Below are positions 3,910 through 35,327 of a stretch of DNA of 64,000 bases, in pieces. The DNA comes from Leucoraja ocellata. Lineage: Eukaryota. The stretch's first letter is position 1; each line of letters opens with the position of its first letter. Location of the stretch: assembly GCA_036785375.1 (NCBI GenBank), contig JAWMAR010000007.1:11284001-11348000 (forward strand). Direction: 5' to 3'. A program made the position numbers and the translations under genes. The notes beneath the pieces are model-generated. The model saw only the letters and a program-made list of their open reading frames with translations. It was not told the DNA's origin and did no database searches.

Positions 3910-4232
3910 TTGAACATTTACCACGGGGCTCGGGCAGTGCAGAGGACATCAAGAATAAGTACATGAAGAAGATTAAAAGCATCTTTGACCGGGACAGGTT
4001 TAAGCAAGTTGAGATGCATAACATACAGGACCAAATTTACAATCAATACAGCCACAACAAGCCAAGAGCTGGTCATGAATTTGCCAGGCGTGGCTCCTCA
4101 ATGCGACCTGCTCATCCAAAACTTCCCCGACCAAAACCAAGCCGGAAACATTTCTTATATAGTGAACTGTGCTGTGTAAATGGGTGTACCAAAGCCGTGT
4201 TCCGCAATGAACTTTGCTTCTGGGCAAAGTGA
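3910..4232 (+). CDS. Relaxin/insulin-superfamily preprohormone gene 1, exon 2 (C-peptide + A chain); exon 1 not found in the window
   Basis: Polypyrimidine tract with cacAG acceptor at 3908-3909 and phase-1 entry. Open frame EHLPRGSGSAEDIKNKYMKK...KPSRKHFLYSELCCVNGCTKAVFRNELCFWAK*. A-chain motif CC-X3-C-X9-C follows a basic site; AATAAA at 4803 and 4844. Confidence 0.85.
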
Positions 4233-4277
4233 TGCTCAATCTATCTCTATGTTTCTGGTGTATGCTGTACATGTGAA

Positions 4278-4465
4278 GCACAACGCACTGCTGGAGTGAC
4301 TCAGCGGGTCAGGCAGCATCTCTAGAGGACATGAATTGCCGATGTTTCTGTTCTGAAGATGGGTACCAACCTGAAACGTCGCCTATCCATGCCCACCAGA
4401 GACCCGCCGAGTCACTCCAACACCTTGTGTTTTTGCTCAAGATTTCAGCATCTGCAGTTCCTTGT
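4278..4465. repeat. Palindromic Penelope-derived repeat with hammerhead-like core (representative copy)
   Basis: tgctggagtgactcagcgggtc...gacccgccgagtcactccaaca. Other copies at about 1220, 1980, 10155, 14605, 33003, 53910 and 58545. Confidence 0.7.
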
Positions 4466-7262
4466 TTTTTTTCGTGTGGAAGCAGAAACAGTCAAGTTGG
4501 ACATGCTTTTGACAAGGACTTCAATTTTGGGAATCCAACGGCAGCAGATTCTTCAGGATTTTCTATCCATAAATTCACATTGTTCATGCCTTGTGCACCA
4601 ACATTCCCACAACGTGTGCTCGTGGGGAAAACTACCATGTGCCAATTGATTGTGTTGCTTCCAATATGCACTACAGAACAAGTGTAACGATTCAACAATG
4701 TCAATGATTCAAAATCACTGTAGTAAAGTTCCAAATGTGATATCACAATGGCAACTCCAGTACTTCTGCATCTTTTTATTTTCAAAAGCAAATCATTCAA
4801 AAAATAAACAGCAATTGTCAAAAACAAAATGGAAAATAACTGCAATAAACAATGAGCTGGAAGAATTCAACGGGTCGAGCAGCATACGTTGGGGTGAAGG
4901 AATTTTTGACGTATTGGGTTAAAACCCTGCATCTGGACATAGTATAATCATTTCAACAGGTTTTGACCTGAAACTTCAACAGTTCCTTCTCTTCACCCTC
5001 CACCCCTTCCCCAACTCCACCCCAATGATACTACTCAATCTGTTGAGTTCCTCTGATAGACTGCTTTGGTGCTCCACCTTCCAGCACCTGCATACCTCTT
5101 ATGTCTCCAGAAGATAAATTGCACTTGTAAGCTCTGGCCAGATTAGCTCGATGGTAATTAGGGCATCTAGTGTTGATCAATTCAGAGGGGGGAGGATTAC
5201 AGCTATTTATCTAAGTAGGGTTCACCCCATTACCGCGTTGCAGCCAGTCATTCGGGGGTAGTGTCAAAGTTACAGGGCATGACGCTGCCTGAGGTTTTCT
5301 GAAGGAAACTAAACTATCAATGTAATTTTAGGTACTCAAAAAAGCTGGAGAAACTCAGCGGGTGCAGCAGCATCTATGGAGTGAAGGAAAAAGGCAACGT
5401 TTCGGGCAGAAACCCTTCTTCAAACTTTTACCTTTTTTTACCTTTAGCTCTGGGCTATCATCACCCCAGGCGTTTTCCTTGTTCAACTAATATTTGGCAG
5501 ATATACTGGAAATTAGATTAAGATCTCGAATATGATACGATCATACAGAACAGAAACTGAACTCTCAGCCCACACTCTCCATGCCACACACTGAATTCTC
5601 TGCCACAGAAGACAGTGGTGGCCAATTCACTGAATGTATTCAAGAAAGAGTGAGATATAGCTCTTAGTGCTAACGGAATCAAGGGAAAAAGAATGAACAA
5701 GGCACTGAATCTGGATGATCAGCCATGATCATATTGTCTATTGTCTATTGAACTTGATGCTTATGTACACAAATACCATTTGCCCATATTAGCCCTGTAT
5801 CCTTTCAGCTTCTCCTAATCAATCACTTGTCCAAATGCATTATTGTAGCTGCCTGTATGACCTCTTCTGATAGTTCATTCCATTTACCTCCTACCTCCAT
5901 GGGAAAAACCTATTCATCTGATCTCCTTTGAACTTCTCACCTCTCACCTTAAACTGTACTCTCAAATTCTAAGCTTCATTGTCCTGGGAAAAAGATTCTG
6001 ACTATCTATTCTAGCCATGTCTTTCATAATATAAATAATATGTTGTGATCTGTTTTGAAAGAGAGGATTAAGAGGCCGTTTCAAATCAGTCGGATAAAAT
6101 AACTAAAGTGGATGTCTGTAACAGTTTTCACTTTTCCAATTAAACAGGAAGAGAAACATTCTGACCAAGCTGCTGGATGGTGGCAGAATCACCAAAAGAC
6201 TCTTGTGTCATCTCTTGGGCTTGTGAGCTTTTGTTACAGGTTTATTGTAGAGATGGTATCGCCATCTGCTGAGCAATCTTGGTACGGAGATTGAAGACAC
6301 AAGGAACTTCAGAAGTTGGTTCACAAAAGAAGACACAGAGTGCTGGAGTAACTGAGCAGGTCAGGAAGCATCTCTGGAGAACATGGATACATGGATATAA
6401 CATTTCAGGTCGGGACTCTTCTTCCGTCTGAGATGAGGAATTCTGTTAGGACTGAGAAGAGGAAAAAAGTTTCAGCCAGAGAGTTGTGAGCCTGTGGAAT
6501 TCTCTGCTGCAGGAGACAGTGGAGGTCAATTCACTGGATGTATTCAAGAGAGAGTTAGATATAGCTCTTAGTGCTAATGGAAACGAGGGATATGGGGAAA
6601 AAGCATGAATAAGGTATTGATTCTGGATGATCAGCCATGATCACATTGAATGGCGATGCTGGCTTGAAGGGCCGAATGGCCTCTTCCTGCACCTACTTTC
6701 TATGTATCTATGTTTCTATGACTTGAAACATCACCTATCGATGTTCTACATAGATGGTCAGTGACCCGCTGAGTTACTCCAGCACAATCCAGTAAAATGA
6801 ACATTGATGCTCATTAGGGTGCGAAAGCATCAAAACAGCACTCTTCCCATCTCTAGCCCAAGGAATCCTAAACTGACAATTACCTCTCCTTAAATTGTAT
6901 CTTTGTCATAATGAAGGAGTTTCACAGGAGGATTGTTCAGCGATAGTAGGGTCTTTAATGAGGTATTACGGCTAATGATCAAAGGCTGAATAGGTGTTTA
7001 AGAAGGAACTGCAGATGCTGAAAAATCGAAGGTACACAAAAATGCTGGAGAAACTCAGCGGGTGCAGCGAAGGAAATAGGCAACGTTTTGGGCCGAAACC
7101 CTTCTTCAGAATAGGTATTTTTTCGGAACATTTTGATGTTAGAAAAAGATGAGTGTTCAATTATGAGACGAAAGGTAAAATGTTGTCTGAACATTCTTAG
7201 TTTATGACAGTGTCTAACCAGGCACCTTTATTATTTAATGGCATAACCATCACCAAGATTAT

Positions 7263-7585
7263 GGCGGCACAGCGGCGCAACGGTAGAGTTGCTGCCTTAC
7301 AGCGCCAAAGACCCGGGTTCGATCCTGACTACGGATGCTGTCTGTATGGAGTTTGTACTTTTTCCCCATGACCCGCGTGGGTTTTCCCCCGGTGCTCCAG
7401 TTTCTTCCCACACTCCAAAGATGTCCAAGTTTATAGGTTAATTGGTTTGGTCAAATTGTAAATTGTCCCTTGTGTGTGTAGAATAGTGTTAGTGTGCGGG
7501 GATCATTGGTTGGCTTGAAATTCAGTGGGCCGAAAGACCTGTTTATACAATGTATCTCTGAACTAAAAACTGAACTAAACTAAAA
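7263..7585 (+). mobile_element. tRNA-derived V-SINE (HE1-like), representative copy
   Basis: tRNA-like head ggcgcaacggtagagttgctgcc...gggttcgatcc, V-domain ggagtttgtac..cgtgggttt, (aaact)n tail. Other copies at about 9696, 11148, 12566, 16330(-), 19885(-), 21862, 22385, 23447, 23755, 24120(-), 24487, 32585(-), 34345 and 63170(-). Confidence 0.85.
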
Positions 7586-7897
7586 TTCAGTCCAATGCTC
7601 AAATTTAGGCCCATCCATTGTCACAAAAAGTTATATGGCAGTGGAACAGACAGCAATGAAGAGATTCCTAGTTTTAGGTACGTAATGTGACAATATTATG
7701 ATCAATTGGAGAGGGTTTTTGATTGACTGGAAGGAAGTGGAGGTAAATTGATTGTATTGACAGTTTCAGTGGGCGGCCTTGTTCTACATAATTGTGAACC
7801 ATTGCAGAAAACGTCCTGGACTCTCTGCAACCCACACTCATATCTAGAAAAGTTCTCCTCTTGAAACCTACCCAGTGATATATGCCCAAGATCCTCA

Positions 7898-8528
7898 GGG
7901 GCCTATCCCTCTTGGGTGATTTTGTAGGCGACTACAGACGACTAGGCTGTTGCCACATGCTCGCCGGGGTGTCGCCTCTATGGTCGTGAGTCATCTACTC
8001 AGTTGCCCAAAGAAGTGTAGCGTTTTTCTGGTCGCCGCTGGATTTTGACATGTTCAAAACTTATCGGCAACAGTCGGCGACAGTTGGCTAGACGTCAATG
8101 AGAGTAACTTGACATCTCTTGATGTAGGTTGTCGACAGGATGACACAGATTGTCGCCGGGTGACGTAGGTTGTCGCCGGGTGCTGATTTCGGTGAATTCC
8201 ATTGGCGACTACCTACGTCAACCTACGTCAACCAGCAACAGGTACCGGCGACTGAATTGTCTTCAGTTGTCGCCGACAGTGTCGTACCTGGTCGTAGCTC
8301 GTCACAGGTGGATGTAGGTTGTTGTAGGTGTGGGTGTAGGTGGACGTCCTAATGGGTTGCCGGCTGTCGGTGGCTTGCCATAGCTTGACGTCGTCTAGGA
8401 GGTAGGTTGTTGTAGACATTGTCATAGACATTGTCATTTGGGTCCAGTCGGTGGTTTTTGGCGACCTGCTACGACTGTGACAGTCACTGGCAGTCGCTGA
8501 AACATATCGCCTAAGTGGGACGGGCCCA
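7898..8528. mobile_element. Harbinger-like MITE (same family as 59304-59966, opposite orientation)
   Basis: TIRs gggcctatccc..ctt / aagtgggacgggccc; body rich in GTCG/GTAG. Confidence 0.7.
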
Positions 8529-11500
8529 TGTCAATTCACTGTCTCACAGCTCAGGTTTCCTTGGGATGAGGGTTTCCTCCCTCATCCCATGGACATGTGG
8601 GTTGGTAAGTGAATTGGCCACTGCAATGCAGATGTAAGACATAGAATCTGAAGGGAGTTGAAACGAATGTGGGGACAAAATAAAGTGATTAGTGTAGGAT
8701 TAGTGCAAATGGGTGGTTGATGGTTGACGTTGACTTGGTGGGCTGAAGGGCCTGTTTCCGCGCTTTGTGGCTGATGCTATGTCTCTGTCATTCCATGTTC
8801 TCTGTGTGTTACAGCTGGATACTCTCAGAAAGGGAACTTTAGGAATGTCCTGTCACAAAATCTAAGTGGTGTCACCAACCTGGAACAAGCTGCCAGAGGA
8901 GGTAGTCGAGGCAGGGTCCATCCCAACATTTAAGGAACAGTTAGACAGGTTTGGTGGGACTAGTGTAGCCGGGACATGTGGGCAAGTTGGGCCGAAGGGC
9001 CTGATCCACACTGTATCACTCTATGACTCAATTACTCCGTGACACCATGTGCGGAGATCACAGGAAGAGTAAGTGAACCAATCATAAGAATAGGAGTGCA
9101 GCACAATGCCTTCCTCTCCCCTAGTCAGGGTGACGTTAAATGGGTGATCTTTGAAGCAACTGGATCAATGGAAAGATAATCTAATCACATTCAGGTATGA
9201 GATGGTCAATAACGTGGTTCAAAGTCTTCAGAAAATGGTCAGGGGTGGGATGGGGTTATTTTCCTCCGTTTTCCTGCCTTGTGTTGCAATAACTGACTGA
9301 GTTTAACTAACTCAACACTGACCTAAGATTGAACCCTGAATATGGTGTCTTAATCTAGCATTTACATATTTTGCCATTGGGAAACTGTTAACAAGCTCTG
9401 ACATTTTCTATTCATTGGACACCGAGAGGCTTTTCTTGTGCAGCACCCAAAGCACTAATGTTAATGAAGACAAAATGGTAACTGTTTTCAGTCTGTCGAT
9501 CATACAGATCTTATCACATATTTAACCCAAAGCAACGGAGGATATTTTGGTATGGATGGTCAATGATGGAGAGATCTCCAAAATGAGGAGGACTTTTTGA
9601 ATGGAGGGACAATATTTTTATAACTTTGGCATTGCACTGTCTTGTCATCTTTTCATAGAGGTTAGCGACTGCAGGGGACAGCAACAGCTGACGGGTGCCA
9701 CAGTAGCGCAACGGTAGAGTTGCTGCCTTACAACGCCAGAGACCCAGGTTCGATCCTGACAATGGGTGCTACCTGTCAGGAGTTTGCACGTTCTCCCTGT
9801 AACTGCGTGGGTTTTCTTCCGGTGCTCCAGTTCCTTCCCACATTCCAAAGACGTGCAGGTTTGTAGTTCAATTGGCTTCTGTAAAATTGCATTGGTTGAT
9901 GTATTTTTGAGAAAGATTCTATCAGCAGTCACTGTGCTCTGAATGAATGTAGGCGTGGTATGGTGGAGGAGCAGAAGGATTTACTGCACGGGTTCACACT
10001 TTAAAAGCTGCAATACAGGCTAACTAACAGTAAATAAAATTGATACATTTCAAGATACAGTCAATATAAAATAAAGAGATAATAAAAAATCTACGGGAAA
10101 TCTTACTGTGACTGCAGCCAGAGTGTTGGTGATCATAATTGAGTATTTTGTAGAAAGGAACGGCTGATGCTGGTTACTGAAGATATACACAAAGTGCTGG
10201 AGTAACTCAGTGGGTCAGGCAGCATCTCTGGAGAAAAAGCATGGGTGATGTTTCGAGATGCTGCCTGACCCACTGAGTTACTCCAGCACTTTGTGTCTAT
10301 ATTTGTGTGTCGTGTTCAGTTTCGGTCACCCTGCTTTAGTTGTTGTTAAGTTGGAAAGAGTGCAGAGAAGATTTACAATGATTCTGTCAGGACGTGAGAC
10401 GTTGGGCAAGGGAGGACATTATTCCTTGAGGATGAGGGGTGTTCGGGTAGAGGTGTATATGATCATGAGAGGAATAGATAGGGTAACAGCGTATTTTACC
10501 CAGAGTAGGGGAATGAAGAACCAGGAGTCATATGTTGAAGTAGATAGTGGAACTTGAGGGGCAACTTTTTCACACAGAGGGTGGTGAGTATATGGAACAA
10601 ACCGTCAGAGGAGGTAACCGAGGCAGGTATTATATAATTTCAAAGACATTTGATCAGGTACGTGGATAGGAAAGGTTTAGAGGGATCAGTGCCTAATGTG
10701 GCCAAATGGGAATAGTATAGATTAGGCATCTTGGTTGGCATTGGTAAGTTGGGCTGAAGGGCCTGTTTCCATGGCTTATGACTCTATGAGTCTATGACCA
10801 GTGGACAGTCTTTGAAAGGCATGAAAAGTTATGGATTCAGGATGTCTGAAATAAAAGCACAGAATACTGGCAATACCCATCTGTGGAGAGAGGGACAGGG
10901 TTAACAGTTCAATTTGTCTCAAAGTGCAAAAGTGGGAAGAAACACATGCTTTAACTCTCATGGTGTGAGAGAGGGCAGGGAGAGAACAGAGAAGTTATCT
11001 GTGAATGGTTTAAGTCCAAAGCTCCCCAGGCAAATCAGGTGCCTTCTGTGCCATCAAGTTATTAATAACTGATCTGCCTGAGGAACCTTAAATGGGAAGA
11101 AATGAATGAGAGGAATATAGACAACAACAGCGCACGGTGGCGCAACGGTAGAGTTGCTGCCTTACAGTGCCTGCAGCGCTAGACACCCGGGTTAGATCTT
11201 GACCACTGGTGCTGTCTGTACGGAGTTTGTACGTTCTCCCTGTGACCCCGTGGGTTTTCTCAGAGATCTTTGGTTTTCTCCCACACGCCAAAGACATACA
11301 GGCTAATTGGCTTGGTATAAAAATTTAAATTGTCCCTAGTGTGTGTAGGATAGTGTTAATATGCGTGGATCGCTGGACGGTACGGACTCGGTGGGCCGAA
11401 CGGCCAGTTTCCGTGCTGTACCTCTAAACTAAACAGCAAGCTGGAACTATGGGAGTGTGGGACACAGAATACAACAGTTACTAGCTATGTGAAAAAATAA

Positions 11501-12052
11501 CAAAATGGCCATAATGTATAACCTATCAGGCAACATCTGTGGAAGGGAGGAAAACTGAATGACTATACAGATGAAAGTGCAGATACTGGAATCTTGAACA
11601 GAAACAAAATGCTGGAAAAACTAAGTGTGTCGGGCCTAAGTGAATCACACAAACCAACCTCCCATCCACTAACTCCATTTACACTTCACGCTGCCTCGGC
11701 AAGGCCACCAGCATAACCAAGGACGAGTATCACCCCGATCACTCCCTCATCTCCCTTCTCCCATCAGGCAAGTGTGAAAACGTACACCTCCAGATTCAGG
11801 GACAGTGTTATCAGGTAACTGTATCATCCTATCAACTAGAGAGCGGTCCTGAACTCCAATTGACCACATTGGAGACCCTTGGACTATCTTTATTCAGACA
11901 TTACTGGACTTTATCTTGCACAAAATGTTACTTCCTTTCTCATGTATCTGTAAATTGTGGACGGTTTGTAATTATGCAAGTCTTTCCGCTGACTGGTTAG
12001 CACATAACAAAAAGCTTTTCACTGTACCTCAGTACATGTGACAATAAACTAA

Positions 12053-12125
12053 CCCAAACCAAACCAAACCAAACCAAACCAAACCAAACCAAATTAACTA
12101 AATTAAACTAAATTAAACTAAACTA
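12053..12125 (+). repeat. (AAACC)n / (AAATT/AAACT)n microsatellite at a LINE tail
   Basis: Direct repeats. Confidence 0.9.
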
Positions 12126-13735: not shown

Positions 13736-16700
13736 TTTACAGCACAAAAATTGACATTTTTGGCGGGTTTTAACGGGCCCGCTACGCTGGAAACAATGGT
13801 AAGTGCCTACCTGCGGTTCATCGCGTGTACTCCATTTGGAGTAGCGTAGCAACAGTACGGGTCATGGGTCGTAGCCCGACTGCCGTGAAACCTCCCTATA
13901 AAGGTGCCAACCAAAAACGTGACCTATCCACCATCTCCAGAGATGCGGCCTGGCCCGCTGAGTTACTCCAGCTCTTTGTGTCTCTTTTCAATAAAAGACC
14001 ACTCACATGCTGACCACACTCTCTACCCACCTCTCCTGTTGTGTGAAAGCTACAAAAGCTAGAAAACATCTACCACTCCTATCGAAGAACGGGTGTTTAG
14101 CTGCTGGTATCAAACCCTTGAAATGCACCATGTGCAAAGGATGTAAAACAGCTAACTTCTAATCCACCTTTTTTTCTGCATTTTCTCTGTAGCAGTAACA
14201 CTATGCTCATCACTATGTTTCCTTTCAGTTTAGAGCTATCTGAAGATGGGTCCCAACCAAAAAGGTCACCCATCCTTTTCTCCAGAGATGCTGCCTGACC
14301 CACTGAGTTTCTCAAGCACTTTGTGTCTATCCTCAGTATAAACCAGCATCTGCAGTTCCTTCCTAGGCACTCAAGTATAGTTTGATTGTACTCACATGTG
14401 ATAAGATGTGTCTGAGTTGCACTGTACCTTGGTACACATGATAATAATTAAAAACAAATACCAATACCAATAAGCTGTGAGCAGGCACTCTGGGGGCTTG
14501 CAGGTATTGCAGGGAACAAGATTCTGTTCACAGCATGGTTTGGAGTGTCAAACATTACATTAGGGTACTTGATGAGGTTTGAATCCTCTCTGGAGGTAGA
14601 AACAAAATGCTAGAGTAACTCAGTGGGACAGGCAGCATCTCTGGAGAGAAGGAATGGGTGATGTTTCAGGTTGTGATCCTTCTTCAGATTGAAGCTTTCT
14701 CAGACGTCTTCAGTCTCAATCCAAAACGTCACCCATTCCTTCTCTCCAGAGATACTGTCCGTCCCACTGAGTTACTCCAGCATTTTGTCTATCTTCAGTG
14801 TAAACTAGCATCTGCAATTTCTTCTGACACATTGAATCCTCTCTTGGCTCCTCTTCTCAGCATTTATTTTCCCATCAGTGCTGTTTTCCTGTTCCCTGCA
14901 GCCATGGATCGCTTTACCTGTGGGAAGACCAGTGTATCCTGGAGCAGGATTGGAAAGAGCAGATTTCCCTCCTGCAGCCAGTAAAGATGGTGAGAGCAAA
15001 TGGCTGCACGTCAACATAATTAGGATAAATTCTTGCCCCAATTGTCCTTGTTTCCGGAACAGAGTCTTCCTTCTCAAGGGGCTTTCTTTTCGAATGACTC
15101 CTTGCAGCAGAAATAAATGGACGGGTTCACCAGACAATGTATTATCACATGCTTTTGGAATGGGTGAAAGAACACAGAGTTAGCATGGTTAAACATGTAT
15201 TTAACAATCAAGAGTCAAGAGTGTTTTATTGTCATATGTCCCAAACAGAACAATGAAATTGACTACTGTAACTTCCTCTCCCCTGACGCTCGGACTGAAG
15301 AAGGGTCTCGAACCGAAACGCACCCATTCCTTCTGAGTTACTCCAGCATTCTGCATCTTTCTTTGGTGTAAACCAGCATCTGCAGTTCCTTCCTACACAA
15401 TTAAATTCTTAAAGGCCTGTCCCACTTGCGTGTCCTTGGTACGCAATATGTAAATGTAGTATCTAATNNNNNNNNNNNNNNNNNNNNNNNNNNNNNNNNN
15501 NNNNNNNNNNNNNNNNNNNNNNNNNNNNNNNNNNNNNNNNNNNNNNNNNNNNNNNNNNNNNNNNNNNNNNNNNNNNNNNNNNNNNNNNNNNNNNNNNNNN
15601 NNNNNNNNNNNNNNNNNNNNNNNNNNTGAACTGCTTTCAGTTTATTAGACTAATATATTAACATATTCTATTGTTCTGTATATATGTATATATATGTGTG
15701 TGTGTGTGTGTGTACATGTGTGTGTGCATACTGAACTTTTTGTTTATTAGATACTACATTTACATATTGCGTGCCAAGGTACACACATACATACATATAT
15801 ACACATATAACAAACAAATAAGCAACAATAGTGCAAAAAGACAAAACCAATAACCCAAGTCCATCTAGTTTAGAACTTATTTGGAGGTTGCAATGTTTAA
15901 TAGCTTGATGCTGTAGGGCTAGTCAAACCATGTTAGAGCTACCATAGTTAAACTTGTGTGTTGATCTGAGGGACTGTTTCAGGTGCACGTCCCAGTTCTT
16001 GGGGATTTCTTTATGGAGATTATGTTGAGAGAGCAGGGTAACAGAAACCATAGCGATGATCCTGGGTTACTCGGTGCCCTCTGTTGCTGGCTGTTCTCAC
16101 TGTGTTCTTGTTCCGCCAGCCTTACCAAGAGCAGAAGGTACTGTAGCGAATGCATTAGAGCACTCTGCTACTTTACAATTGCCTTTGAAACTAATGATGT
16201 AGAACGCCGAGGGAACATCATGTCCAATTCTCAGCAGATCAGAAGGCAGGATGGAACAGGAGCTCATGAGCTGCATGGTGTCCTCAACAGAAATGCCGCA
16301 CAATGTCTGGAGCATGAACCTGGCCGTACTTTAGATTTTACTTTAGGCTTTAGAGATACAGCGCGGAAACTGTCCTTCAGCCCACCGAGTCTGTTCTGAC
16401 CAGTGATCACCCCACACTCTAGGGGCAATTTACAATTTACAGAAGTCAACTTAACCTGTACGTCTACACGGTCACAGGGAGAACGTTCAAACTCTGTACA
16501 ACCGTAGTCCGGATCGAACACCCGTCTCTGGCACTGTAAAGCAGCAACTCTACCACTGCGCCACCGTGCCATTGTTGTGGATCACTATGCTCATTATAAA
16601 TAACCAGAGCATAGAATATTGCTGATGACCATTTTGTAACCGGCATTCGTTTCTTTGTGCTGTCATGGTGACATATTGCAAACCTTTGAAACTAAATTCA

Positions 16701-22918: not shown

Positions 22919-22974
22919 CAGAGGAAAGAGCTGATGAATGTAAGAGGCAGGGGTGGTCAGGACTGTGAACTGAA

Positions 22975-23158
22975 ATGAGAAATCTGGTGCCAATCCTGGC
23001 CGTGGAGCTGCTGCTGTCGATGTCCTTTATCACGGGCTTTGCCAAGACACTTGATCTGGATGAGGTATACAGAAAGCTCTGTGGCAGATTCTACCTGAGG
23101 AAGGCAGTGTTCATCTGTGAACACGTCAGGGGAATATCTCTGCACACCCGTGGATATG
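22975..23158 (+). CDS. Relaxin-like preprohormone gene 2, exon 1 (signal peptide + B chain)
   Basis: MRNLVPILAVELLLSMSFITGFA-KTLDLDEVYRKLCGRFYLRKAVFICEHVRGISLHTRGY. Hydrophobic leader, B-chain LCG-X10-C, relaxin cassette R-FYL-R-KA-V (RxxxRxxV). Phase-1 donor G|GTGAGT at 23158/23159. Confidence 0.93.
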
Positions 23159-23446
23159 GTGAGTGCTGACATCCCTGTAATTCATTTGGGCCACAAAGTG
23201 CTCACCGTGATGGCCTAACGGGGCAAGTGTTATTGCCATTACAATGGGAGGTGCTATTTATCATTGAAGTGTGTATGATATTACGGCTTTAGCATGTAAA
23301 TAGAAACAGAGTACAGGTTTTCAGTACTCGCTGTTGCCAGTGGGGGTCTTCTTTATTTTTCAAAAATGTACACTTCGCATACTCACACATATTCATGAGA
23401 CTAATAAGATATTGAATATATCACATGACATAAATCATACCCTTAT

Positions 23447-26160: not shown

Positions 26161-26462
26161 ATAGCTTCCTGAGCTCAAGTGCTGAAGATTATGCCAGGGA
26201 GATTTTCAGAAGGCACCCAGGTCAACTGCTGATAAATGGGCGGCTTCAGCAACTGGAGCCCTATCGCGGACAGCAACTGTTTCTGAACCGCGGCCTGCTT
26301 GGGCCGAAGCCAGAGGATGCCCCTTGGAGAAACAGTGCCAGCACCAAGCAACCCTCTCCGATGAGCGGTTTCCGGCGTGTTGTCAAGCAAGGAGTTAAAA
26401 GGCAATGTTGCCTAACCAAATGCACTGCCAGGGAGATATCCTACAGCTGTCGCAGTCCGTGA
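26161..26462 (+). CDS. Relaxin-like preprohormone gene 2, exon 2 (C-peptide + A chain)
   Basis: ttccAG acceptor at 26159-26160, phase 1, in frame with exon 1 (184+302 nt = 161 aa + stop). Ends ...SGFRR-VVKQGVKRQCCLTKCTAREISYSCRSP* with canonical CC-X3-C-X8-C; AATAAA at 26864. Confidence 0.93.
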
Positions 26463-27645: not shown

Positions 27646-30546
27646 AATAGTAAGATTAAACAAGAACTTACCAGTTCGAAGTTTGATCGTTATTTTATGA
27701 AAGAGTACGTTGAGGGAATATGTGAAGAACCCCGCCAGGACGCATGCGTGTCATTCTTCAAAGCAGCGGTGTGAAATCACAGATAACTGTAATGACTGAA
27801 CATAGTAAGATTAGAGAAGAAAATACCAGTTGAGTATATGATCAAGGGTGGGAGCGGAGGGCACATATTCCCTCAACGTACTCCTCATAAAATAACGATC
27901 AAACTTCGAACTGGTAAATTCTCATTTAATCTTACTATTTTACTTCAGAGTCACACGATGCCTCCTGTGCCTTTCATCTACCTCCACAGATGGAGATGGA
28001 AATTGGTAGTACCCCAACCAAGCGCACTGGCATCAGTTTGTAGCATCACTAAGGGTTTGCTGATAACGATAGGGTTGGAACAATGCCGAATGTTATCCCT
28101 CCACCATTTTAATTCCATAAGCTTTGATTGGTGGCTTATTGGTCTGTCGAAATGACCAGTATTAACATTGAGTGTTTGTATTTTGCCCTTTGTAGATTTT
28201 TGGTAATACAAAGGTCCAAATTGTGTGGCTGGAAAGGCAGACACTATATGCCAATTATACTTGCTACCAATCTGATAGACGGTTCACTGATGTCAGTGGG
28301 GTTGTTGCAGGCCTCAGTTAAGATTGTAGCCTTGTCCTTTGGTAAAGTCACCGACATGTGAGCAATCAATAGTGAACCCCAAATAATCCATTATGTTGGT
28401 AGGCGTTAGTTTAGATTTAACTGGATGGATGATAACCCCAGTTTTCACCCAATTGTATGGTGGCTGTTACAGCTGGTTAGGCCAACTCCAATGTTATGCC
28501 CACAATTAGTATGATCATATGATTATGTATTTGGTAGAGCTCTATACTGCCAGAGCTGTCCCATCCAGTTGAATTTTTTTAAATAACGTTTGTGATCAGT
28601 CCGTGTAGGCACTGAATAGTAAGCATCTTTTAGGTCGATGCTAGCCATGGAGTAGCCTTTGGAAATCAGTCCTTTAGCAGTTACCAGTTCCCATTTTGTA
28701 CTGAATATATAGTACAATGTATTCCAGCCAATCGTGTTGGGTTTACCCATTGCCCCTTTTGCACAATTCAATGGTGTATCCCTGGATACTGCTTAGGATA
28801 TAAGTGTCTGTAGTTAATATACACCATGTATCCAAAAGAGTGTAATCTCCCACCAATGTGTGTATTATCCACTCTTCCTATAATTTGTAAGGGACCAGAC
28901 CCACCTACATCCATTGTTACCAGTGGAAGTTTGCTTCTTCTGTGTGGTCTTCGTGGAGGTTGAGGCGCCGGTGTCTGGGTTTGCTTTTGGGCTGGGGGTT
29001 TGCGCATCTTCCAGGAAGGCCGGTCTGGGCTATGGTCTAAAAGACCGCTGTCCTGTATGCCCGGCCTTTGAGCTTTCACCAGCTTCTCTTGTTCTGCTGG
29101 TGGGTGCATAAGGGTGCTGTCTTTGGCTGTAAGAGATCCTTAATGTTGTCGCCTTTATGAGCCCCATGGCTTTCCTAAGTCCTGCTCCGACATGTTTCCC
29201 GATGCTATTTCCACGACTGGAACATTCAGGGATGCGCAGTTTCCTGGTCCCAAGTATGTTTGCAGTGGTGTCCATCGTGGTCTGGATATATGTATTTGGA
29301 CACCATGACCAGTAGATTTTGCCTTCCTGCACCCCCTGCACACTTGTAGTTTTGATCATCAAAACCCCTCTTCAGGGTCAGCCCAGAATTGGCCCCCCAG
29401 TACTCCCCTCTGACGAGGGAGATGCATTGTGCAGCCCTACAGGAGGTGCTGCTGTGGGTTTTACATAGTGCCCACAGTGACTAGACTCCATCTCCCGGAG
29501 CCTGTCATGTTGGAGCTCGGCTCCATAAGCCGCTCCAACCGGCTCCAGCGCTCACGGTCGCTGGCCGCCCAAAGTCGGACTCATCAGTTCTCGACTCTTT
29601 TGGTTTTCTTCTTGCCTTCCCGCCCAGACGCTGTGTTTAATCTGGCCGGTGCGAGGGCGAAGTCGGGCACAGCTGTTCCCTTACGGGTGATTCCTGTGCC
29701 GCCGGCCGCTGCTGGCGTCCGCAACTCCGCGGTCTTCCCCCACCAGCTCTGGTCGACTTGTTTGCCTTGTGCATGTTTCCCCCACCTGTAGAACAGTATG
29801 GGAACAATAAAGACCGCAGTATCACATACCTGCAGGTCCAGGCTTAAAACTTGCCGTTATGGGGGACCGTCCTTCCACCCCTCCTCCTGCCATTTTGACT
29901 TGTCAAAGCCAACGGCTCCGTTCTGTATAGTCTCCCGCCCAGCCATGGTGTTTAATCTGGCCGGTGCGGGAGCGAAGTCGGGCACAGCTGTTCCCTTACG
30001 GGTGCCGCCTGCCGTTGTTTGCACAGCTCTCCATGTTTCCCCACCTGTAGAACAATATGGGGAGAATAAAGACCGCAGTTTCACTTACCTGCAGGTCCTG
30101 GTTTAAACTGTCGCTACGGGAGAAACGTCGTTCCACCCCGCCTCCTGCCATTTCGACTTGTCAAAGTCGACGGCCCCATTCTGAATAGTCTCCCGCCTGG
30201 CCGTGGTGTTCTGGCCGGCGCGGGACCAACAGTCGGCACAGCTGATCCCACTTACGGGGCTTGTGCCTTCAGCTGCTGCTGGCTCCCACAACTTCGCGGT
30301 CCTCCCCAGCCAGCTTTACTCGCAGCACTTGTGGACACTATTTTGTCCAGCCTCCCCCCCTGTGTAAAACAGCGCGGGGACAAACACTACCGCAGAGTAA
30401 ATCACTTACCTGCAGGTCCCGGTTTCAAACTTACCGCTGCGGGGGAACGCTCCACTCCGCCTGTCGTTTCGCAAGCGTGAAAGCGATATGACACGCATGC
30501 GTCATGGCGGGGTTCTTCACGTAGTCACTCATGTGACTCTGAAGTT
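27646..30546 (-). mobile_element. DIRS1-type retrotransposon, degenerate, tyrosine recombinase region apparently deleted
   Basis: Minus-strand RT motif ASIDLKDAYYSVP...WQYRALP (28523-28771) and RNase H motif QTDASALGWG (27978-28244). ITRs at 27722-27753 and 30489-30520; ICR at 27862-27955 is complementary to 27646-27724 and 30532-30545. Confidence 0.88.
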
Positions 30547-30699
30547 AAATCTTTATTAACACTCGAGTAAGATAAACATGCATGCAAACTAATATCTTCT
30601 CATTTACTTTACTATTTCAACTTATCACTTCTCAAACTAAATCACAAAACTCATGACTTGGACTCAGATATTATCCGTATAAATGAATTGGCCAGATTG

Positions 30700-31215
30700 A
30701 CCCAATTTGAGGAAGGACATTCTTGCTATTGAGGGAGTGCAGCGTAGGTTTACAAGGTTAATTCCCGGGATGGCGGGACTGTCATATGCTGAGAGAATGG
30801 AGCAGCTGGGCTTGTACACTCTGGAGTTTAGAAGGATGAGAGGATACCTCATTGAAACATATAAGATTGTTAAGGGCTTGGACACGCTAGAGGCAGGAAA
30901 CATGTTCCAGATGTTGGGGCAATCCAGAACCAGGGGTCACAGATTAAGAATAAGGAGTAAGCCATTTAGAACGGAGACAAAGAAGCACTTTTTTCTCACA
31001 GAGAGTGGTGAGTCTGAGGAATTCTCTACCTCAAAGGGCGGTGGAGGCAGGTTCTCTGGATGCTTTCAGAGAGAGCTAGATAGGGCTCTTAAAAATAGTG
31101 GAGACTGGAGATATGGGGAGAAGGCAGGAACGGGGTACTGATTGGGGATGATCAGCCATGATCATATTGAATGGCGCTGCTGGCTCGAAGGGCCGAATGG
31201 CCTACTCCTGCACCT
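30700..31215 (+). mobile_element. CR1 LINE 3' fragment
   Basis: AIEGVQRRFTRLIPG...EFRRMRGYLIETYK and the conserved 3' UTR. Confidence 0.9.
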
Positions 31216-32047
31216 NNNNNNNNNNNNNNNNNNNNNNNNNNNNNNNNNNNNNNNNNNNNNNNNNNNNNNNNNNNNNNNNNNNNNNNNNNNNNNNNNNNNN
31301 NNNNNNNNNNNNNNNNNNNNNNNNNNNNNNNNNNNNNNNNNNNNNNNNNNNNNNNNNNNNNNNNNNNNNNNNNNNNNNNNNNNNNNNNNNNNNNNNNNNN
31401 NNNNNNNNNNNNNNNNNNNAATAAGCTACAAAATAAAACAAATCCTTATTGAAACCTTTGTGAATCAAGTTAGCCAAAATGTGCTTTCATGGGAACTAAT
31501 ATCATGGGAAACTAATCTTTCTAACCTGACCACGTACCTTCATCAATAATGCAATGTTTCAAACGTAGATTAACATATATAAAGTGATTATGTAAAGTAT
31601 TAGAAACTGCTGACAACAAAATATTTCAGTGAGCCCAACAATGCAAGTTGTCAGCTGCTACATGATATGTCAGACATCAGTTATCCACACTGAATGGTTG
31701 GACTAAGCATTAATCAAACAGAGGGCTGTAGCTGCACTTAATTAGGACATTACAAATTTGAGACATTGGAAAAACGTCAAAAGAGTCCAGGTAATGGGAT
31801 AAAAGTTAATGAAAAACCAATGAGGCACATTAAGAGTGGGTGCAAAACTGTCCTGAAGGAAGAAGGAGCGGATGAGTGGAGAGGGTGGCGACTGGAATGA
31901 AATAGTGAGGTAACTCAGAACCAGTCCAGAAATCCAGACAAGTGGCAGCTTGAGACGGAAGAGTGAACTTACCCGTGGAGGAAGTCAGCAGCGGCTTATG
32001 CTGTAGAACGATCAGGGAGAGACTCCATCCGACCAGAGTGAGCGGCA

Positions 32048-32230
32048 ATGAAGAATCTGCTGTCAGTCCTTCCAATGGGGATGCTGCTCGCTGCCCTTAC
32101 AGACTCCGCAGGGACCACAGCAATCAACCTTGATGAGCAATTCACCAAGCTGTGTGGCCGAGACTTTGTAACAAAAGTCGTCAACGTCTGCAGAGGAATC
32201 AACTGGAAGGATCTCCTTCCCGTCTAGATG
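32048..32230 (+). pseudogene. Relaxin/INSL-like gene 3, exon 1 (signal + B chain) with an apparent 1-nt deletion (pseudogene or assembly error)
   Basis: MKNLLSVLPMGMLLAALTDSAGTTAINLDEQFTKLCGRDFVTKVVNVCRGINWKDLLPV*. Colinear with gene 2 (Cys36 and Cys48 in both). TAG at 32225-32227 lies just before the donor G|GTGAGT at 32230/32231. The exon is 183 nt versus 184 nt in gene 2; adding one C to the CCC run at 32219-32221 restores ...LLPRLD and phase 1. Confidence 0.88.
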
Positions 32231-32364
32231 GTGAGTCACAAATCCACAAACCAGGCGTGGGAATAGATCATTTGTACTTTACTGTTCATTCAAAGGATGT
32301 GTGCTTTGCCAGCTGAGCCACAATTTAATTGCCCATGTCTGGTTGCCCTTGAGGAGGTGGTTAA

Positions 32365-32583
32365 AGGGGCATCATTTGCGCATCATTTACACAACATCAT
32401 TTACGCGTCACGATGCACAACTCACGCGTCGTGACACGCACGTGATGCATTACGCGCGCATGGTATGTGGTGATGTAGGCAGTGACGCGCGGTCGCGTGC
32501 GGTGCCCCAGGGTTTCGGGATTCGCAAAATCTTCGCGCGCCACCTGTGTAACGCGTAAATGACGCCCAAGTGAGACCGGCCCT
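32365..32583. mobile_element. Harbinger-like MITE, reverse-orientation relative of 34639-34875
   Basis: The body is the reverse complement of 34639-34875; right TIR cccaagtgagaccggccct. Confidence 0.7.
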
Positions 32584-34638
32584 TTAGTTTCAGTTTAGAG
32601 ATACAGTGTGGAAACAAACTCACCGCTTCCGCACGGACCTCGCACAATAACACTACCCTACACACACTGAGGACAATTTACACTCATACCAAGCCAATTA
32701 ACCTACAACCTGTACGTTTTTGGAGTGTGGGAGAAAACGGAAGATCTCGGAGAAAGCCCATGCAGGTCACGGGAGAACGTACAAACTCTGTACCGACACC
32801 ACCCGTAATCAGGATCGAACCTGGGTTTCCAGCGCTGCATTCGCTGTAAGGCAGCAACTCTACTTCCCCACTGCCACGATGTCTAAAGAACAAAATGAAC
32901 AGATAAAAATGACCAGACATAACTTTTTTTGAAGGATTAGTGGAGAATAGGATGAACTACAGACAATCTCATGCTAATGGAACATATCTACATAGATCAT
33001 AGGTGTAGGAAAGACACAAAAAGCTGGAGTAACTCAGCCGGTCAGACAGCATCTCTGGAGGAAAGGAGTATGTGAGGTTTTGGGTCAAGAACCTTCTTCA
33101 GAACAGTGCTAGAGTAACTCAACGGATCAGGATCTCTGGAGAACATGGATAGCGGATACTGAAGAAGGATCCAGACCCATAACGTCACCTATCCATATTA
33201 TCCAGAGTTGCTGCCTGACCTGCTGAGTTACTCCAGCACTTTGTGTCCTTTTTTATAAACCAGCATCTACAGACCCTTGTTTCTACTATGAGACAATGTG
33301 TCTGGTCAACAATACTTACCGTGAAATAGGGATGCGATGCTTCTCAGGTAATTGTGATCAACCAGTGTTGGAGGAGAACCGTGTGGAGATGAGGAGGAAT
33401 TTCTTTAGCCAGAGGGTGGAGAATCTGTGGAATTATTTGCCACAGAAGGCTGTGGTGGCCAAGTCAATTAATATTTTTAATGCAGTGTTAGATAGATTCT
33501 TTATTAGTACGGGTGTCGGGGTTATGGGGAGAAGGCAGTAGGATGGGGTTAGGAGGGAGAGATGGATCAACGATGATTGAATGGCAGAATAAACTTGATG
33601 GGCTGAATGGCCCAATTCTGCTCCTATCACTTATCACCTCATTACCTTATGTGAACTCTGTTAGTGCATTGGAGCAGACTGCAGTCTGGTTCGACACTGA
33701 GGACAGGAATGATGGGGGGGTCAAGCAGCATCTGTGAAGGCAAAGGGCATAGGATGAGACCTTGCACCAAATCCTGATGCTGGTCTCAAACTCAAACATC
33801 GACTTGCACTTTCTGCCTCCACGGGTGCCGCATGAATTCTTCTGGCAGTCTGTCATCTGTTTTGTTGACCGGAATTTTGTTGATTGGAGTTACGCTCTCT
33901 GAATAGACAGTGAAAGCATCAAGAGCCCGACTCAAGGCTGTTTGTCATGTGCACTTACAGGGGAACAATGAAAATTCTCACTTGCAGCACCAGAACTGAA
34001 CTGTAAACACAATACACGTAGATAATGTAATAAACAACATCTAATTAATCAATAATTCTAACAGTGGTGCAAAATTACCCAAAGTCCTGAGTGCAAGCAA
34101 AGGCACAGCCGAGGTTAATATTGAGTAGTGGTCAATAGACTGACGGTTGTTGGGATGAAACTTTTATTGAACATGGTGGCCACAGTTTACAGATTCCTAT
34201 CCATTCTTCCCTATTGTTAGTGCAAAATGAGAGCATGGTAAGGGCAATGTGGGTCTTTGATGATACTGGCTGCCTTTTTAAGTTAGCACCTCCTATAGAT
34301 CTCTTCAATGGTGGTGCCAATGCCCCTTCATTCCTGGGCGTCCGAGTGGCATGGTGGCGCAGCGATACCTTTCAGCGCCAGAGACTTGAATTCGATCCTG
34401 ACTGTGGGTGCTGTCTGTATGGAGTTTGTACGTTCTCTCTGAGACCATGTGGGTTTTCCCCGGGTGCACTGGTTTCCTCCCACATTCCAAAGACATACTG
34501 GTTTGTAGATTAATGGGCTTTGGTAAATTGGAAATGGCCTTAGTATGTGGGATAGTGCACAGGGTGATCGAGGAACTGCATGGACTCGGTGGGCAGAAGG
34601 GCACGTTTCCACGCCATGTCTCCAAAAATTTAGTCTAA

Positions 34639-34875
34639 AGGTCCTGTCCCACTTGGGCGTCATTTGCGCAGGTGGCGTGCAAAGATTTTGTGAATCCCCA
34701 AATCCTGGGGCGCCTCGCGCAACCGCGCGTCGCTGCCTACGTAACCATGCACTATGCGCGTGTAATGCACACCATGCGCGCGTAATCACATGCGTAATGC
34801 GTAATCACATGCGCGTCATGCGTAAATGATGTTACGTAAATGACACGCAAATGACACCCAAGTGGGACAGGCCCT
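34639..34875. mobile_element. Harbinger-like MITE with TAA TSD
   Basis: TAA|aggtcctgtcccacttggg ... cccaagtgggacaggccct|TAA. Confidence 0.8.
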
Positions 34876-35001
34876 TAAAGAGTTCCTGAACCAGGTTGCG
34901 ATGCAGCCTATCAGTACGTAGCTGAGACAAAGCGACAGAAAATAAAATTGGATGGCAATAATTTCCCAATGTTGACAGATCGGATTTTACTTTTGTTCCA
35001 G

Positions 35002-35327
35002 ATCCCTCTCAGTCCTCTGGAGATGATGCCCTTGTGAAAGACATGATGAAGATGCAGATGCTGCTTCCCGGTAATGGGACTCACGATCCTGACACGGACA
35101 ATGGAGAACAAGGATTACACCCAGACCTCAGCCAGAGTGAGGAGATGCCTGATGATGTCCATGGGCTTGTCACACAGACCCCTGGAGATCACGAGGCACT
35201 GCTGGGTCTGGAAGAACCATTTATCCATCGGAAACTGACCAAAAGGCAAATTTCAACCACCGATCGCTGCTGCAAAAGCAGTTGCACATTGAGGCAGATC
35301 CGCCGACTGTGTTTCCAGACAAAATGA
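35002..35327 (+). CDS. Relaxin/INSL-like gene 3, exon 2 (C-peptide + A chain)
   Basis: ttttgttccAG acceptor at 35000-35001, phase 1. DPSQSSGDDALVKDMM...IHRKLTKR-QISTTDRCCKSSCTLRQIRRLCFQTK*, with canonical CC-X3-C-X8-C after KR; AATAAA at 35778 and 35789. Confidence 0.9.

What the first reader, a model, noticed from the sequence alone, without database searches (positions are those of the whole stretch)
3910..35327. Tandem cluster of at least 3 divergent relaxin/insulin-superfamily hormone genes in a cartilaginous fish
Seen: three same-strand genes within 32 kb. Genes 2 and 3 show the two-exon, phase-1 preprorelaxin layout (signal-B-C-A, six Cys); gene 1 is represented only by its phase-1 exon 2. 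Genes 2 and 3 are colinear over the first 48 aa but only 17/48 identical, and all three C-peptides and A chains differ strongly. Known: vertebrates have dispersed RLN/RLN3/INSL3/INSL5 ohnologs, and local tandem expansion is best known from the placental RLN1/RLN2/INSL4/INSL6 cluster. None of these peptides matches the skate relaxin sequence as I recall it. Inference: an independent, fast-evolving, lineage-specific family of secreted relaxin-like peptides, possibly reproductive or glandular.
Basis: partly seen in the sequence, partly recalled or inferred. Interest (0 to 1): 0.92.

Follow-up and report, generated by a model that had tools for sequence, protein, structure and literature searches.

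The report
Shark-type relaxin-like hormone gene cluster
Three neighbouring genes for very divergent relaxin-like hormones, related to barely studied shark genes, lie together in this cartilaginous-fish scaffold; they look like real genes, but I found no evidence that they are expressed.

Summary
The exons are real. Three A-chain motifs and two B-chain motifs lie on the + strand (0 of 200 shuffles give three A motifs). They have canonical splice sites and a phase-1 intron.

- Gene 2 (22975-26462) is intact and would encode 161 aa.
- Gene 3 (32048-35327) is broken in this assembly. A C-run is one base shorter than three public contigs imply, which puts a TAG before the donor. This is probably an assembly error or an allele.
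- Gene 1 has only its exon 2 in the window, and its A chain has odd CCx3Cx9C spacing.

Each gene sits on a different contig of the scaffold, separated by N gaps. No gap lies inside a gene, but the adjacency of the genes is unverified.

An exhaustive HMMER search of 1.84 billion proteins found four relatives. One is a public-contig ORF of gene 3 itself. The other three are shark proteins (Scyliorhinus torazame, Cetorhinus, Rhincodon), annotated hypothetical, uncharacterized or "prorelaxin-like". A further search added a Chiloscyllium protein and two S. torazame fragments. The B chains match relaxin-family B chains, not insulin.

The cluster belongs to an elasmobranch relaxin-like family with several paralog types. 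One type is well conserved, so not all of the family evolves fast.

Three RNA runs showed no reads on the two exons tested. Orthology to RLN, RLN3, INSL3 or INSL5 could not be tested.

Verdict: new members of a known kind, of moderate interest.

The parts
3910..4232 (+). Gene 1, exon 2 only: end of the C-peptide plus the A chain, stop at 4230-4232. The acceptor is AG 3908-09, phase 1. A basic RK site lies 7 residues before the CC.
   Evidence: hhalign against the shark family profile A4 gave probability 54%, P 1.3e-4, colinear to the ...CFW end. No Pfam hit.
4170..4217 (+). Gene 1 A-chain cysteine motif, CCx3Cx9C. This is one residue longer than the canonical x8 spacing.
22975..23158 (+). Gene 2 exon 1 coding part: signal peptide plus B chain. 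184 nt, phase-1 donor GT at 23159. TATAAA at 22913.
   Evidence: hhalign against A4 gave probability 96%, E 3.1e-9.
23080..23118 (+). Gene 2 B-chain core, Cx11C, holding an RxxxRxxV cassette.
26161..26462 (+). Gene 2 exon 2: C-peptide, RR and KR sites, A chain with CCx3Cx8C at 26406-26450, stop at 26460-62. ATTAAA at 26817 and AATAAA at 26864 lie downstream.
   Evidence: Pfam Insulin PF00049 E 0.0025, 19.2 bits, below the 23-bit cut-off. Held at 0.85-0.89 of its words by runs X1-X3.
32048..32230 (+). Gene 3 exon 1: signal peptide plus B chain (Cx11C at 32153-32191, with Trp five residues after the second Cys). In this assembly it is 183 nt with an in-frame TAG at 32225-27. Strong donor GT at 32231.
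   Evidence: P0001 and P0005, from 3 public contigs, read the same exon with an intact frame.
32219..32221 (+). C-run where the window is one base shorter than P0001 and P0005 imply. The translated match changes frame here.
   Evidence: tblastn: P0001 residues 1-49 end at 32221 in one frame, and residues 50-80 start at 32221 in the next.
35002..35327 (+). Gene 3 exon 2: C-peptide with a PDD motif, KR site, A chain with CCx3Cx8C at 35268-35312, stop at 35325-27. The acceptor is AG 35000-01, phase 1. ATTAAA at 35705 and AATAAA at 35778.
   Evidence: Pfam Insulin E 0.0055, 18.1 bits. 45% identical to S. torazame P0002 over 64 residues.
15468..15626 (.). Assembly gap between gene 1 and gene 2. It is flanked by a 34-nt inverted repeat (15434-67 / 15746-79) and a TG/TA microsatellite.
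31216..31419 (.). Assembly gap 629 nt upstream of the gene 3 ATG. Its left edge is a very high-copy repeat. Nothing laid bridged it.

Best explanation
The stretch holds members of an elasmobranch family of relaxin-like prohormone genes. Each gene has two coding exons. Exon 1 encodes the signal peptide and the B chain. A phase-1 intron follows just after the B chain. Exon 2 encodes a long connecting peptide of about 75-85 residues and the A chain.

Gene 2 is intact. Gene 3 is intact except for a one-base-shorter C-run in this assembly. Gene 1 is seen only as its exon 2.

Inferred mechanism, not shown here: the precursor enters the secretory pathway. Three disulfides form, two between the chains and one within the A chain. 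Prohormone convertases cut at the basic sites before the A chain (RR/KR in gene 2, KR in gene 3, RK in gene 1) and near the conserved LLPR-type motif after the B chain. The two-chain peptide then acts on relaxin-family GPCRs. Gene 2 carries RxxxRxxV, the cassette I recall as the RXFP1/2-type binding motif. Gene 3 lacks the second Arg but keeps the Trp five residues after the second B-chain Cys, so the paralogs probably differ in receptor preference.

The copies arose by old local duplications.
For: - Motifs and splice sites. Excess over chance.
- The exon-1 profile A1 matched 9 PDB sequences at E<=10. Eight are relaxin-family B chains (relaxin-3 0.0072, INSL3 0.0096, INSL5 0.037, relaxin-2 0.041) and none is insulin or IGF.
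- Among the hits of the exon-2 (A-chain exon) profile A2, the best is the relaxin A chain, E 0.15.
- Pfam Insulin matched the two exon-2 peptides at E 0.0025 and 0.0055.
- Exhaustive HMMER gave 4 hits at E<=0.001 among 1,835,955,588 proteins: P0001 (gene 3 itself, from public contigs) and three shark proteins. A profile of those three found 6 proteins in all, including a Chiloscyllium protein and two S. torazame fragments.
- Shark homologs P0004 and P0006 pass the Pfam cut-off at 25.9 and 23.8 bits against 23.
- Gene 3 against P0002: 46.6% identity in exon 1 and 45% in exon 2.
- Gene 2 exon 1 against the shark profile: probability 96%.
- All three exon-2 peptides align colinearly with the shark proteins. 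Ser, Pro and the four Cys are invariant.
- The nearest Atlas clusters to P0002 are prorelaxin H1, INSL5, prorelaxin 1 and relaxin-3-like, scoring 0.91-0.92.
- Only repeats are shared between the gene regions at the DNA level, so the duplications are old.
Against: - There is no transcript evidence. None of the 5 runs that hold gene 2 exon 2 is recorded as RNA. Raw RNA runs X8, X12 and X15 (5, 6 and 25 in 100 of each run read) have zero depth on gene 2 exon 2 and gene 3 exon 1. Their tissues are unknown.
- Each window exon scored alone is below the Pfam cut-off or unmatched.
- The statistics for gene 1 exon 2 and gene 2 exon 2 against the shark profile are weak, at 54% and 30% probability.
- Gene 1 has non-canonical A-chain spacing and no exon 1 in view.
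- Gene 3 as assembled stops before its donor.
- Genes 2 and 3 lack the Gly before the third A-chain Cys. I recall that Gly as typical of relaxins.
- The AlphaFold model of P0002 was unusable, pLDDT 38.6.
- Adjacency depends on two unbridged gaps.
Confidence: 0.7

Rival explanations
1. Part of the cluster is dead. Gene 3 is a real null allele or pseudogene, with the stop before the donor. Gene 1 is a relic exon with a damaged A chain and no exon 1. Only gene 2, at most, encodes a hormone.
For: - The in-frame TAG at 32225-27 and the phase mismatch in the window.
- The CCx3Cx9C spacing in gene 1.
- No exon 1 for gene 1 in 1-3909.
- No hit for gene 1 exon 2 in Pfam, the protein collection or the Atlas.
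- No RNA reads on the exons tested.
Against: - Three public contigs encode gene 3 exon 1 with the frame intact (P0001 on 2 contigs, P0005 on 1). The truncated form is not in the collection as an exact sequence.
- Exon 2 of gene 3 and of gene 1 are each open from the acceptor to the stop, about 107 codons, with an intact acceptor and a basic site.
- An earlier scan note places an insulin/relaxin-like exon 6354 nt before the window start. It could be exon 1 of gene 1; I did not check this.
Confidence: 0.2
2. The three genes are the ordinary vertebrate ohnologs (for example RLN, INSL3, INSL5) or their direct duplicates at the RLN locus. The cluster would then be a known, conserved arrangement that is merely poorly annotated in cartilaginous fishes.
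For: - NCBI names the whale shark relative 'prorelaxin-like'.
- The Atlas neighbours of P0002 are prorelaxin, INSL5 and relaxin-3-like clusters with near-equal scores.
- The best PDB hit of P0006 is the INSL3 B chain, E 0.053.
Against: - Passages of PMC3310001 place RLN, RLN3, INSL3 and INSL5 on four different post-2R chromosomes, not in tandem.
- The three genes resemble the shark family more than any solved relaxin-family chain (38.8-43.1 bits for the three shark proteins, against at most 19.5 bits).
[quoted passage not shown] - The only neighbouring gene is Siglec-15-like. By my recollection it is not a marker of any of the four loci.
Confidence: 0.12
3. The cluster is a scaffolding artefact. 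The three contigs come from separate loci and were joined across repeat-bounded gaps.
For: - Each gene is on its own contig: 1-15467, 15627-31215 and 31420-37219.
- The left edge of gap 31216-31419 is a repeat with depths in the millions.
- No contig of X1 bridges that gap, and X1 shows no cover at 31645-32244.
Against: - The gaps are short (159 and 204 N), as expected where read pairs span a repeat.
- Gap 1 lies inside a local inverted repeat whose two arms sit on either side of it.
- Three paralogs of one rare family falling in the same orientation in one scaffold by mis-joining is unlikely.
- The tool states that a hole in cover proves nothing.
Confidence: 0.08

Closest known systems
Shark relaxin-like gene models: S. 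torazame GCB70559.1 (hypothetical), Cetorhinus maximus XP_078414650.1 (uncharacterized), Rhincodon typus XP_048451220.1 (prorelaxin-like), and the Chiloscyllium punctatum model chiPu_0003996
   Same: They share the signal-B-long C-A layout and the exon boundary at the same aligned position. They also share the LLPR-type motif after the B chain, the S-x-x-D and PDD motifs in the C-peptide, and the CCK..C start of the A chain. Gene 3 looks orthologous to the S. torazame protein P0002, with 18/29 identities in the A region.
   Different: Genes 1 and 2 have no close counterpart among them, with at most 12/33 identities in the B region and 10/31 in the A region. The well-conserved 'CGGWPW' type found in Cetorhinus, Chiloscyllium and S. 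torazame is not in this window. It is unknown whether the shark genes are also clustered.
Vertebrate relaxin family (RLN/relaxin-2, RLN3, INSL3, INSL5)
   Same: They share the six-Cys framework, a B-chain core similar to relaxin-family B chains, a long C-peptide, and one phase-1 intron after the B chain. Gene 2 has the RxxxRxxV cassette.
   Different: Similarity is low, at most 19.5 bits. Gene 3 lacks the second Arg. Genes 2 and 3 lack the Gly before the third A-chain Cys (a feature I recall). Gene 1 has x9 spacing. The four canonical genes lie on separate chromosomes (PMC3310001, passages seen), whereas these genes are neighbours.
Placental RLN1/RLN2/INSL4/INSL6 tandem cluster
   Same: Both show local duplication of a relaxin-type gene into several divergent neighbours on one strand. 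The figure legend seen describes local duplications at the RLN locus.
   Different: The lineage and the sequences differ. A shared origin was neither shown nor excluded. The resemblance I noticed between the gene 1 A chain and INSL6/RLN2-type A chains rests on memory only and was not tested.
Peptide-sequenced elasmobranch relaxins (little skate, spiny dogfish, sand tiger shark) and the glycosylated relaxin-like molecule of the male Atlantic stingray
   Same: They are relaxin-like two-chain peptides from elasmobranch gonads. The stingray peptide lacks the relaxin motif (passage of PMC551602), as gene 3 does.
   Different: I could not obtain their sequences through any tool, so identity with genes 1-3 is untested. 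The paper says they have high similarity with relaxin-3, which these genes do not show.

Membership tests
Insulin/IGF/relaxin superfamily (Pfam PF00049) | Six cysteines spaced Cx11C in the B chain and CCx3Cx8C in the A chain | tested here: met
   Genes 2 and 3 have exactly these motifs and no other Cys in either exon peptide.
Insulin/IGF/relaxin superfamily (Pfam PF00049) | The same cysteine spacing in gene 1 | tested here: not met
   The gene 1 A chain is CCx3Cx9C. Its B chain is not in the window.
Insulin/IGF/relaxin superfamily (Pfam PF00049) | Profile score at or above Pfam's gathering cut-off (23 bits) | tested here: inconclusive
   Exons were scored apart. Gene 2 exon 2 gave 19.2 bits and gene 3 exon 2 gave 18.1 bits. 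The other three exon peptides had no PF00049 hit. Joined proteins were not scored, because the joined step was left out. Among shark relatives, P0004 (25.9) and P0006 (23.8) pass, while P0003 (22.3) and P0002 (20.9) do not.
Insulin/IGF/relaxin superfamily (Pfam PF00049) | Prepro layout signal-B-C-A with basic processing sites, and a phase-1 intron in the C-peptide region | tested here: met
   Gene 2 meets it fully. Gene 1 shows the phase-1 acceptor and the site before the A chain. Gene 3 meets it only with the extra base implied by P0001 and P0005.
Relaxin subfamily (RLN, RLN3, INSL3, INSL5) | B chain more similar to relaxin-family B chains than to insulin or IGF | tested here: met
   Of the 9 PDB sequences hit by profile A1, 8 are relaxin-family B chains (E 0.0072-0.046) and none is insulin or IGF. 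The E-values are marginal.
Relaxin subfamily (RLN, RLN3, INSL3, INSL5) | RxxxRxxI/V receptor cassette in the B chain (motif recalled from the literature) | tested here: inconclusive
   Gene 2 has RxxxRxxV. Gene 3 has RxxxTxxV, so it is not met. Gene 1 cannot be tested.
Relaxin subfamily (RLN, RLN3, INSL3, INSL5) | Activation of an RXFP receptor | not testable with these tools
   This needs synthetic peptides and receptor assays.
One-to-one orthology with RLN, RLN3, INSL3 or INSL5 | Conserved synteny with the markers of one of the four loci | not testable with these tools
   The only other gene in the 64 kb is Siglec-15-like. No eukaryotic genome collection was available.
One-to-one orthology with RLN, RLN3, INSL3 or INSL5 | Phylogenetic grouping with one canonical ohnolog | not tested
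   No canonical relaxin-family precursor could be obtained through a tool. PDB chain scores and Atlas scores do not discriminate between the ohnologs.
Elasmobranch relaxin-like family (P0002-P0008) | Significant, colinear sequence similarity to the shark proteins | tested here: met
   Profile A1 scored the three shark proteins at E 3.3e-6 to 7e-5 in 1.84 billion proteins. Gene 3 against P0002, in a comparison with the session's eight stored proteins only, gave 4e-16 and 1e-16. Gene 2 exon 1 gave probability 96%. Gene 1 exon 2 (54%) and gene 2 exon 2 (30%) are weaker.

The most novel reading that the evidence does not exclude
This is a chondrichthyan-specific multigene locus of relaxin-like hormones with at least four or five paralog types across elasmobranchs. 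It lies beside a Siglec-15-like gene and is additional to the four canonical ohnologs. Its members have split receptor specificities: an RxxxRxxV type, a Trp-bearing type without the second Arg, and a type with an enlarged A-chain loop. It includes the genes for divergent gonadal or glandular peptides such as the stingray relaxin-like molecule.
Probability: 0.3. Interest if true: 0.65.

Novelty: new member of a known kind. Interest (0 to 1): 0.45.

Why it matters
Relaxin-family evolution has been worked out almost entirely from bony vertebrates. In that picture there are four ohnologs on four chromosomes, and tandem growth of the family is known from the mammalian RLN locus.

A separate, old tandem expansion in cartilaginous fishes would show that local duplication shaped this hormone family more than once. 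It would give natural B-chain variants for studying receptor selectivity. It might also supply the genes behind relaxin-like peptides that were purified from elasmobranch gonads decades ago.

It has a practical side too. These genes are missed or left unnamed by current annotation.

Tried and rejected
- Single-exon phmmer searches of the PDB found nothing. Only the profiles gave hits.
- Word-indexed protein searches with gene 2 exon 2 and gene 1 exon 2 found nothing.
- The Atlas gave no usable hit for gene 1 exon 2.
- An AlphaFold2 model of P0002 with alignment A4 had mean pLDDT 38.6 and pTM 0.20. I made no fold search with it.
- The bacterial promoter and terminator scan does not apply to this genome and told me nothing.
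- A weak tblastn match at 1987-2064 was considered as exon 1 of gene 1 and rejected. It lies in an interspersed repeat that recurs elsewhere in the window, and it has no start, signal peptide or second Cys. A relaxed Cx10-12C scan of 1-3909 gave 4 matches, none plausible.
- For gene 3 I considered an alternative in-frame splice: the weak donor at 32222 with the acceptor at 35013, both phase 0. I think it less likely than a one-base length difference, because P0001 and P0005 and all shark homologs keep the LLPR...D end of exon 1.
- Exact look-up of six window ORFs found none of them in the collection.
- The read laying stretch (26245-32244) was chosen to cover part of gene 2 exon 2 and all of gene 3 exon 1 within the 6000-letter limit. 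It held no donor-acceptor pair, so no splice joint could have been seen. X1 gave no cover over gene 3 exon 1, so the C-run could not be checked with reads.
- I judged X1 to be DNA rather than RNA. Its contigs sum to about 2 Gb, and depth is even (27-31) from exon 2 to 27650, well past the poly(A) signals. This is an inference.
- Five literature searches found no paper on a relaxin gene cluster in cartilaginous fishes. Subscription papers are not in that library.
Dataset S1 of PMC3310001 may list further genes, but I did not see it.
All searches were made exon by exon, so no full-length score, fold or tree exists for the window's own proteins.

Full report
WHAT IS THERE

A six-frame scan finds three insulin-type A-chain motifs on the + strand, at 4170-4217, 26406-26450 and 35268-35312. 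It finds two relaxin-type B-chain motifs at 23080-23118 and 32153-32191. In 200 block shuffles the A motif appears 0.065 times on average and never three times. The B motif appears 0.17 times on average and reaches two in 3 of 200 shuffles.

Read directly from the sequence:
- Gene 2 starts at ATG 22975. Its donor is ATG|GTGAGT at 23159, after 184 coding bases. Its acceptor is AG 26159-60, and the frame stays open to the stop at 26460-62. This gives 161 codons with a phase-1 intron.
- Gene 1 shows only an exon 2 (3910-4232), behind a T-rich tract and AG, also in phase 1.
- Gene 3 starts at ATG 32048. It has the same strong donor at 32231 and a phase-1 acceptor at 35000-01.

TATAAA lies 62 nt before the gene 2 ATG, and poly(A) signals follow all three stops within about 360-570 nt.

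THE GAPS

The gaps at 15468-15626 and 31216-31419 are intergenic. No exon or intron of genes 2 or 3 contains N, so no frame depends on a gap.

The three genes nevertheless sit on three different contigs of the scaffold. Gap 1 lies inside a local 34-nt inverted repeat with a TG/TA microsatellite, which fits a local assembly difficulty. Gap 2 abuts a very high-copy repeat, and no contig laid bridged it. Adjacency, order and strand of the three genes are therefore plausible but unverified.

THE BREAK IN GENE 3

In the window, exon 1 of gene 3 is 183 nt and has TAG at 32225-27 just before the donor. Exon 2 needs phase 1.

The exhaustive protein search returned an 80-residue ORF, P0001, from public-run contigs. 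A near-identical ORF, P0005, is in the same cluster. Both read this very exon and run on into the intron with the frame intact. P0001 was seen on 2 contigs and P0005 on 1.

Laid back on the window, P0001 changes frame at 32221, inside a C-run. The window is therefore one C shorter there. The intact reading restores a motif (LLPR..D) that every shark homolog has at the end of exon 1. The truncated ORF is not in the collection as an exact sequence.

I take this for an assembly error or a null allele, not an old pseudogene. Reads could not settle it, because the one DNA run laid had no cover there.

FAMILY

Scored alone, the exon-2 peptides of genes 2 and 3 hit Pfam Insulin below the cut-off: E 0.0025 and 0.0055, at 19.2 and 18.1 bits against 23. 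Gene 1 gave nothing.

A profile of the two exon-1 peptides hit 9 PDB sequences. Eight are relaxin-family B chains: relaxin-3 at 0.0072, INSL3 at 0.0096, INSL5 at 0.037 and relaxin-2 at 0.041. None is insulin or IGF. The exon-2 profile hit the relaxin A chain best, at E 0.15.

The same exon-1 profile, run against all 1.84 billion representatives, gave four hits at E<=0.001:
- P0001, which is gene 3 itself.
- A Scyliorhinus torazame hypothetical protein (P0002).
- A Cetorhinus maximus uncharacterized protein (P0003).
- A Rhincodon typus 'prorelaxin-like' protein (P0004).

A profile of the three shark proteins found 6 proteins in all. The additions are a Chiloscyllium punctatum protein (P0006) and two S. 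torazame fragments. P0004 and P0006 pass the Pfam cut-off, while P0003 and P0002 fall just under it.

Against the shark profile, gene 2 exon 1 scores 96% probability, gene 1 exon 2 scores 54% and gene 2 exon 2 scores 30%. All three exon-2 peptides align colinearly with the shark proteins, sharing an S-x-x-D start, a Pro (PDD in most) and the Cys framework. The nearest Atlas clusters to P0002 are prorelaxin, INSL5 and relaxin-3-like, at almost equal scores.

PARALOG TYPES

- Gene 3 pairs with S. torazame P0002: 18/29 identities in the A region, 46.6% in exon 1 and 45% in exon 2.
- A second type, with CGGWPW after the B chain, is 26/33 and 22/27 identical between Cetorhinus and Chiloscyllium. 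It is also present in S. torazame. That species therefore has at least two types, and this type is not fast-evolving.
- The whale shark protein, gene 2 and gene 1 are each distinct.
- Between the window's gene regions only interspersed repeats are alike at the DNA level, so the duplications are old.
- An earlier scan note puts another insulin/relaxin-like exon 6354 nt before the window. I could not see it.

EXPRESSION

Five runs hold gene 2 exon 2 plus its 3' flank. Three runs of organism A hold 0.85-0.89 of its words and two runs of organism B hold 0.30. None is recorded as RNA.

Run X1 behaves as genomic DNA. It differs from the window at two places in 867 nt, and one of them, 26335 G>C, is a Ser/Thr change in the C-peptide.

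Three raw RNA runs carrying the same species label, of unknown tissue, had zero depth on gene 2 exon 2 and on gene 3 exon 1. They matched only repeats. Transcription is therefore unshown. The sample is too small to call the genes silent.

MECHANISM (INFERRED)

These are secreted prohormones. The expected steps are signal-peptide removal, formation of three disulfides, and convertase cuts at the basic sites before the A chain and near the conserved motif after the B chain. The product would be a two-chain peptide acting on relaxin-family GPCRs.

Gene 2 has RxxxRxxV. Gene 3 has RxxxTxxV plus a Trp five residues after the second Cys. Gene 1 has a one-residue-longer A-chain loop. The receptor meanings of these motifs are recalled from the literature and were not tested here.

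AGAINST WHAT IS KNOWN

Passages of PMC3310001 put RLN, RLN3, INSL3 and INSL5 on four different post-2R chromosomes and describe local duplications at the RLN locus in mammals.

A passage of PMC551602 lists relaxins peptide-sequenced from skate, dogfish, stingray and sand tiger shark. It says they have high similarity with relaxin-3, and that the stingray peptide lacks the relaxin motif. A passage of PMC2805637 notes relaxin-like peptides in shark testis, ovary and alkaline gland.

I could not obtain those peptide sequences, nor any canonical precursor, through a tool. The only neighbouring gene is Siglec-15-like.

Five searches found no paper on such a cluster. Supplements were closed.

VERDICT

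These are real relaxin-like genes, new members of a known hormone family. They belong to an elasmobranch group that already exists as unnamed or loosely named models in four shark species. The tandem arrangement and the divergent motifs are of moderate interest. Expression, linkage across the gaps and the relation to the four ohnologs remain open.

Noticed in passing
window 45344-61641, + strand (V-set exons 49676-50155, 54237-54617, 57566-57934, 60220-60594; Ig plus transmembrane exon 61225-61641): An Ig-superfamily receptor gene with four V-set exons and one further Ig-domain exon (Ig_2/Ig_3/I-set; weak C2-set match). Its best solved relative is Siglec-15 (7zoz, E 3.6e-14 for the first V exon and 1.2e-7 for the fourth). 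It is the only non-hormone gene in the window.
   Followed up: partly
window 30645-31215: A very high-copy repeat ends at the gap. It includes the ORF at 30707-31141. Depth is over 1000 in each of three RNA runs and in the millions in the DNA contigs, so the element is abundant and transcribed.
   Followed up: no
window 15434-15817: A 34-nt inverted repeat (97% complementary) sits on either side of the N gap, next to TG/TA microsatellites. This is a likely cause of the assembly break.
   Followed up: partly
window 22239-22315, 12046-12126, 43235-43311: Three pentanucleotide microsatellites. (ACTAA)x15.4 is perfect and lies about 660 nt upstream of the gene 2 ATG. The others are (AAACC)-type and (ACAAT)x15.4.
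   Followed up: no
window 26335: Run X1 reads C where the window has G. This is a Ser/Thr difference in the gene 2 C-peptide. A second difference, 26836 A>T, is in the 3' flank.
   Followed up: no
window 47170-48721, + strand: A run of long ORFs (139, 143 and 204 aa) inside the receptor gene's intron looks like a retroelement reverse transcriptase. I did not scan them.
   Followed up: no
protein P0007 (S. torazame, 239 aa): In this annotated model, the exon-2 part of the CGGWPW-type relaxin-like gene is fused to an unrelated N-terminal part. It is probably a chimeric gene prediction. P0008 holds the matching B-chain part with an unrelated tail.
   Followed up: no
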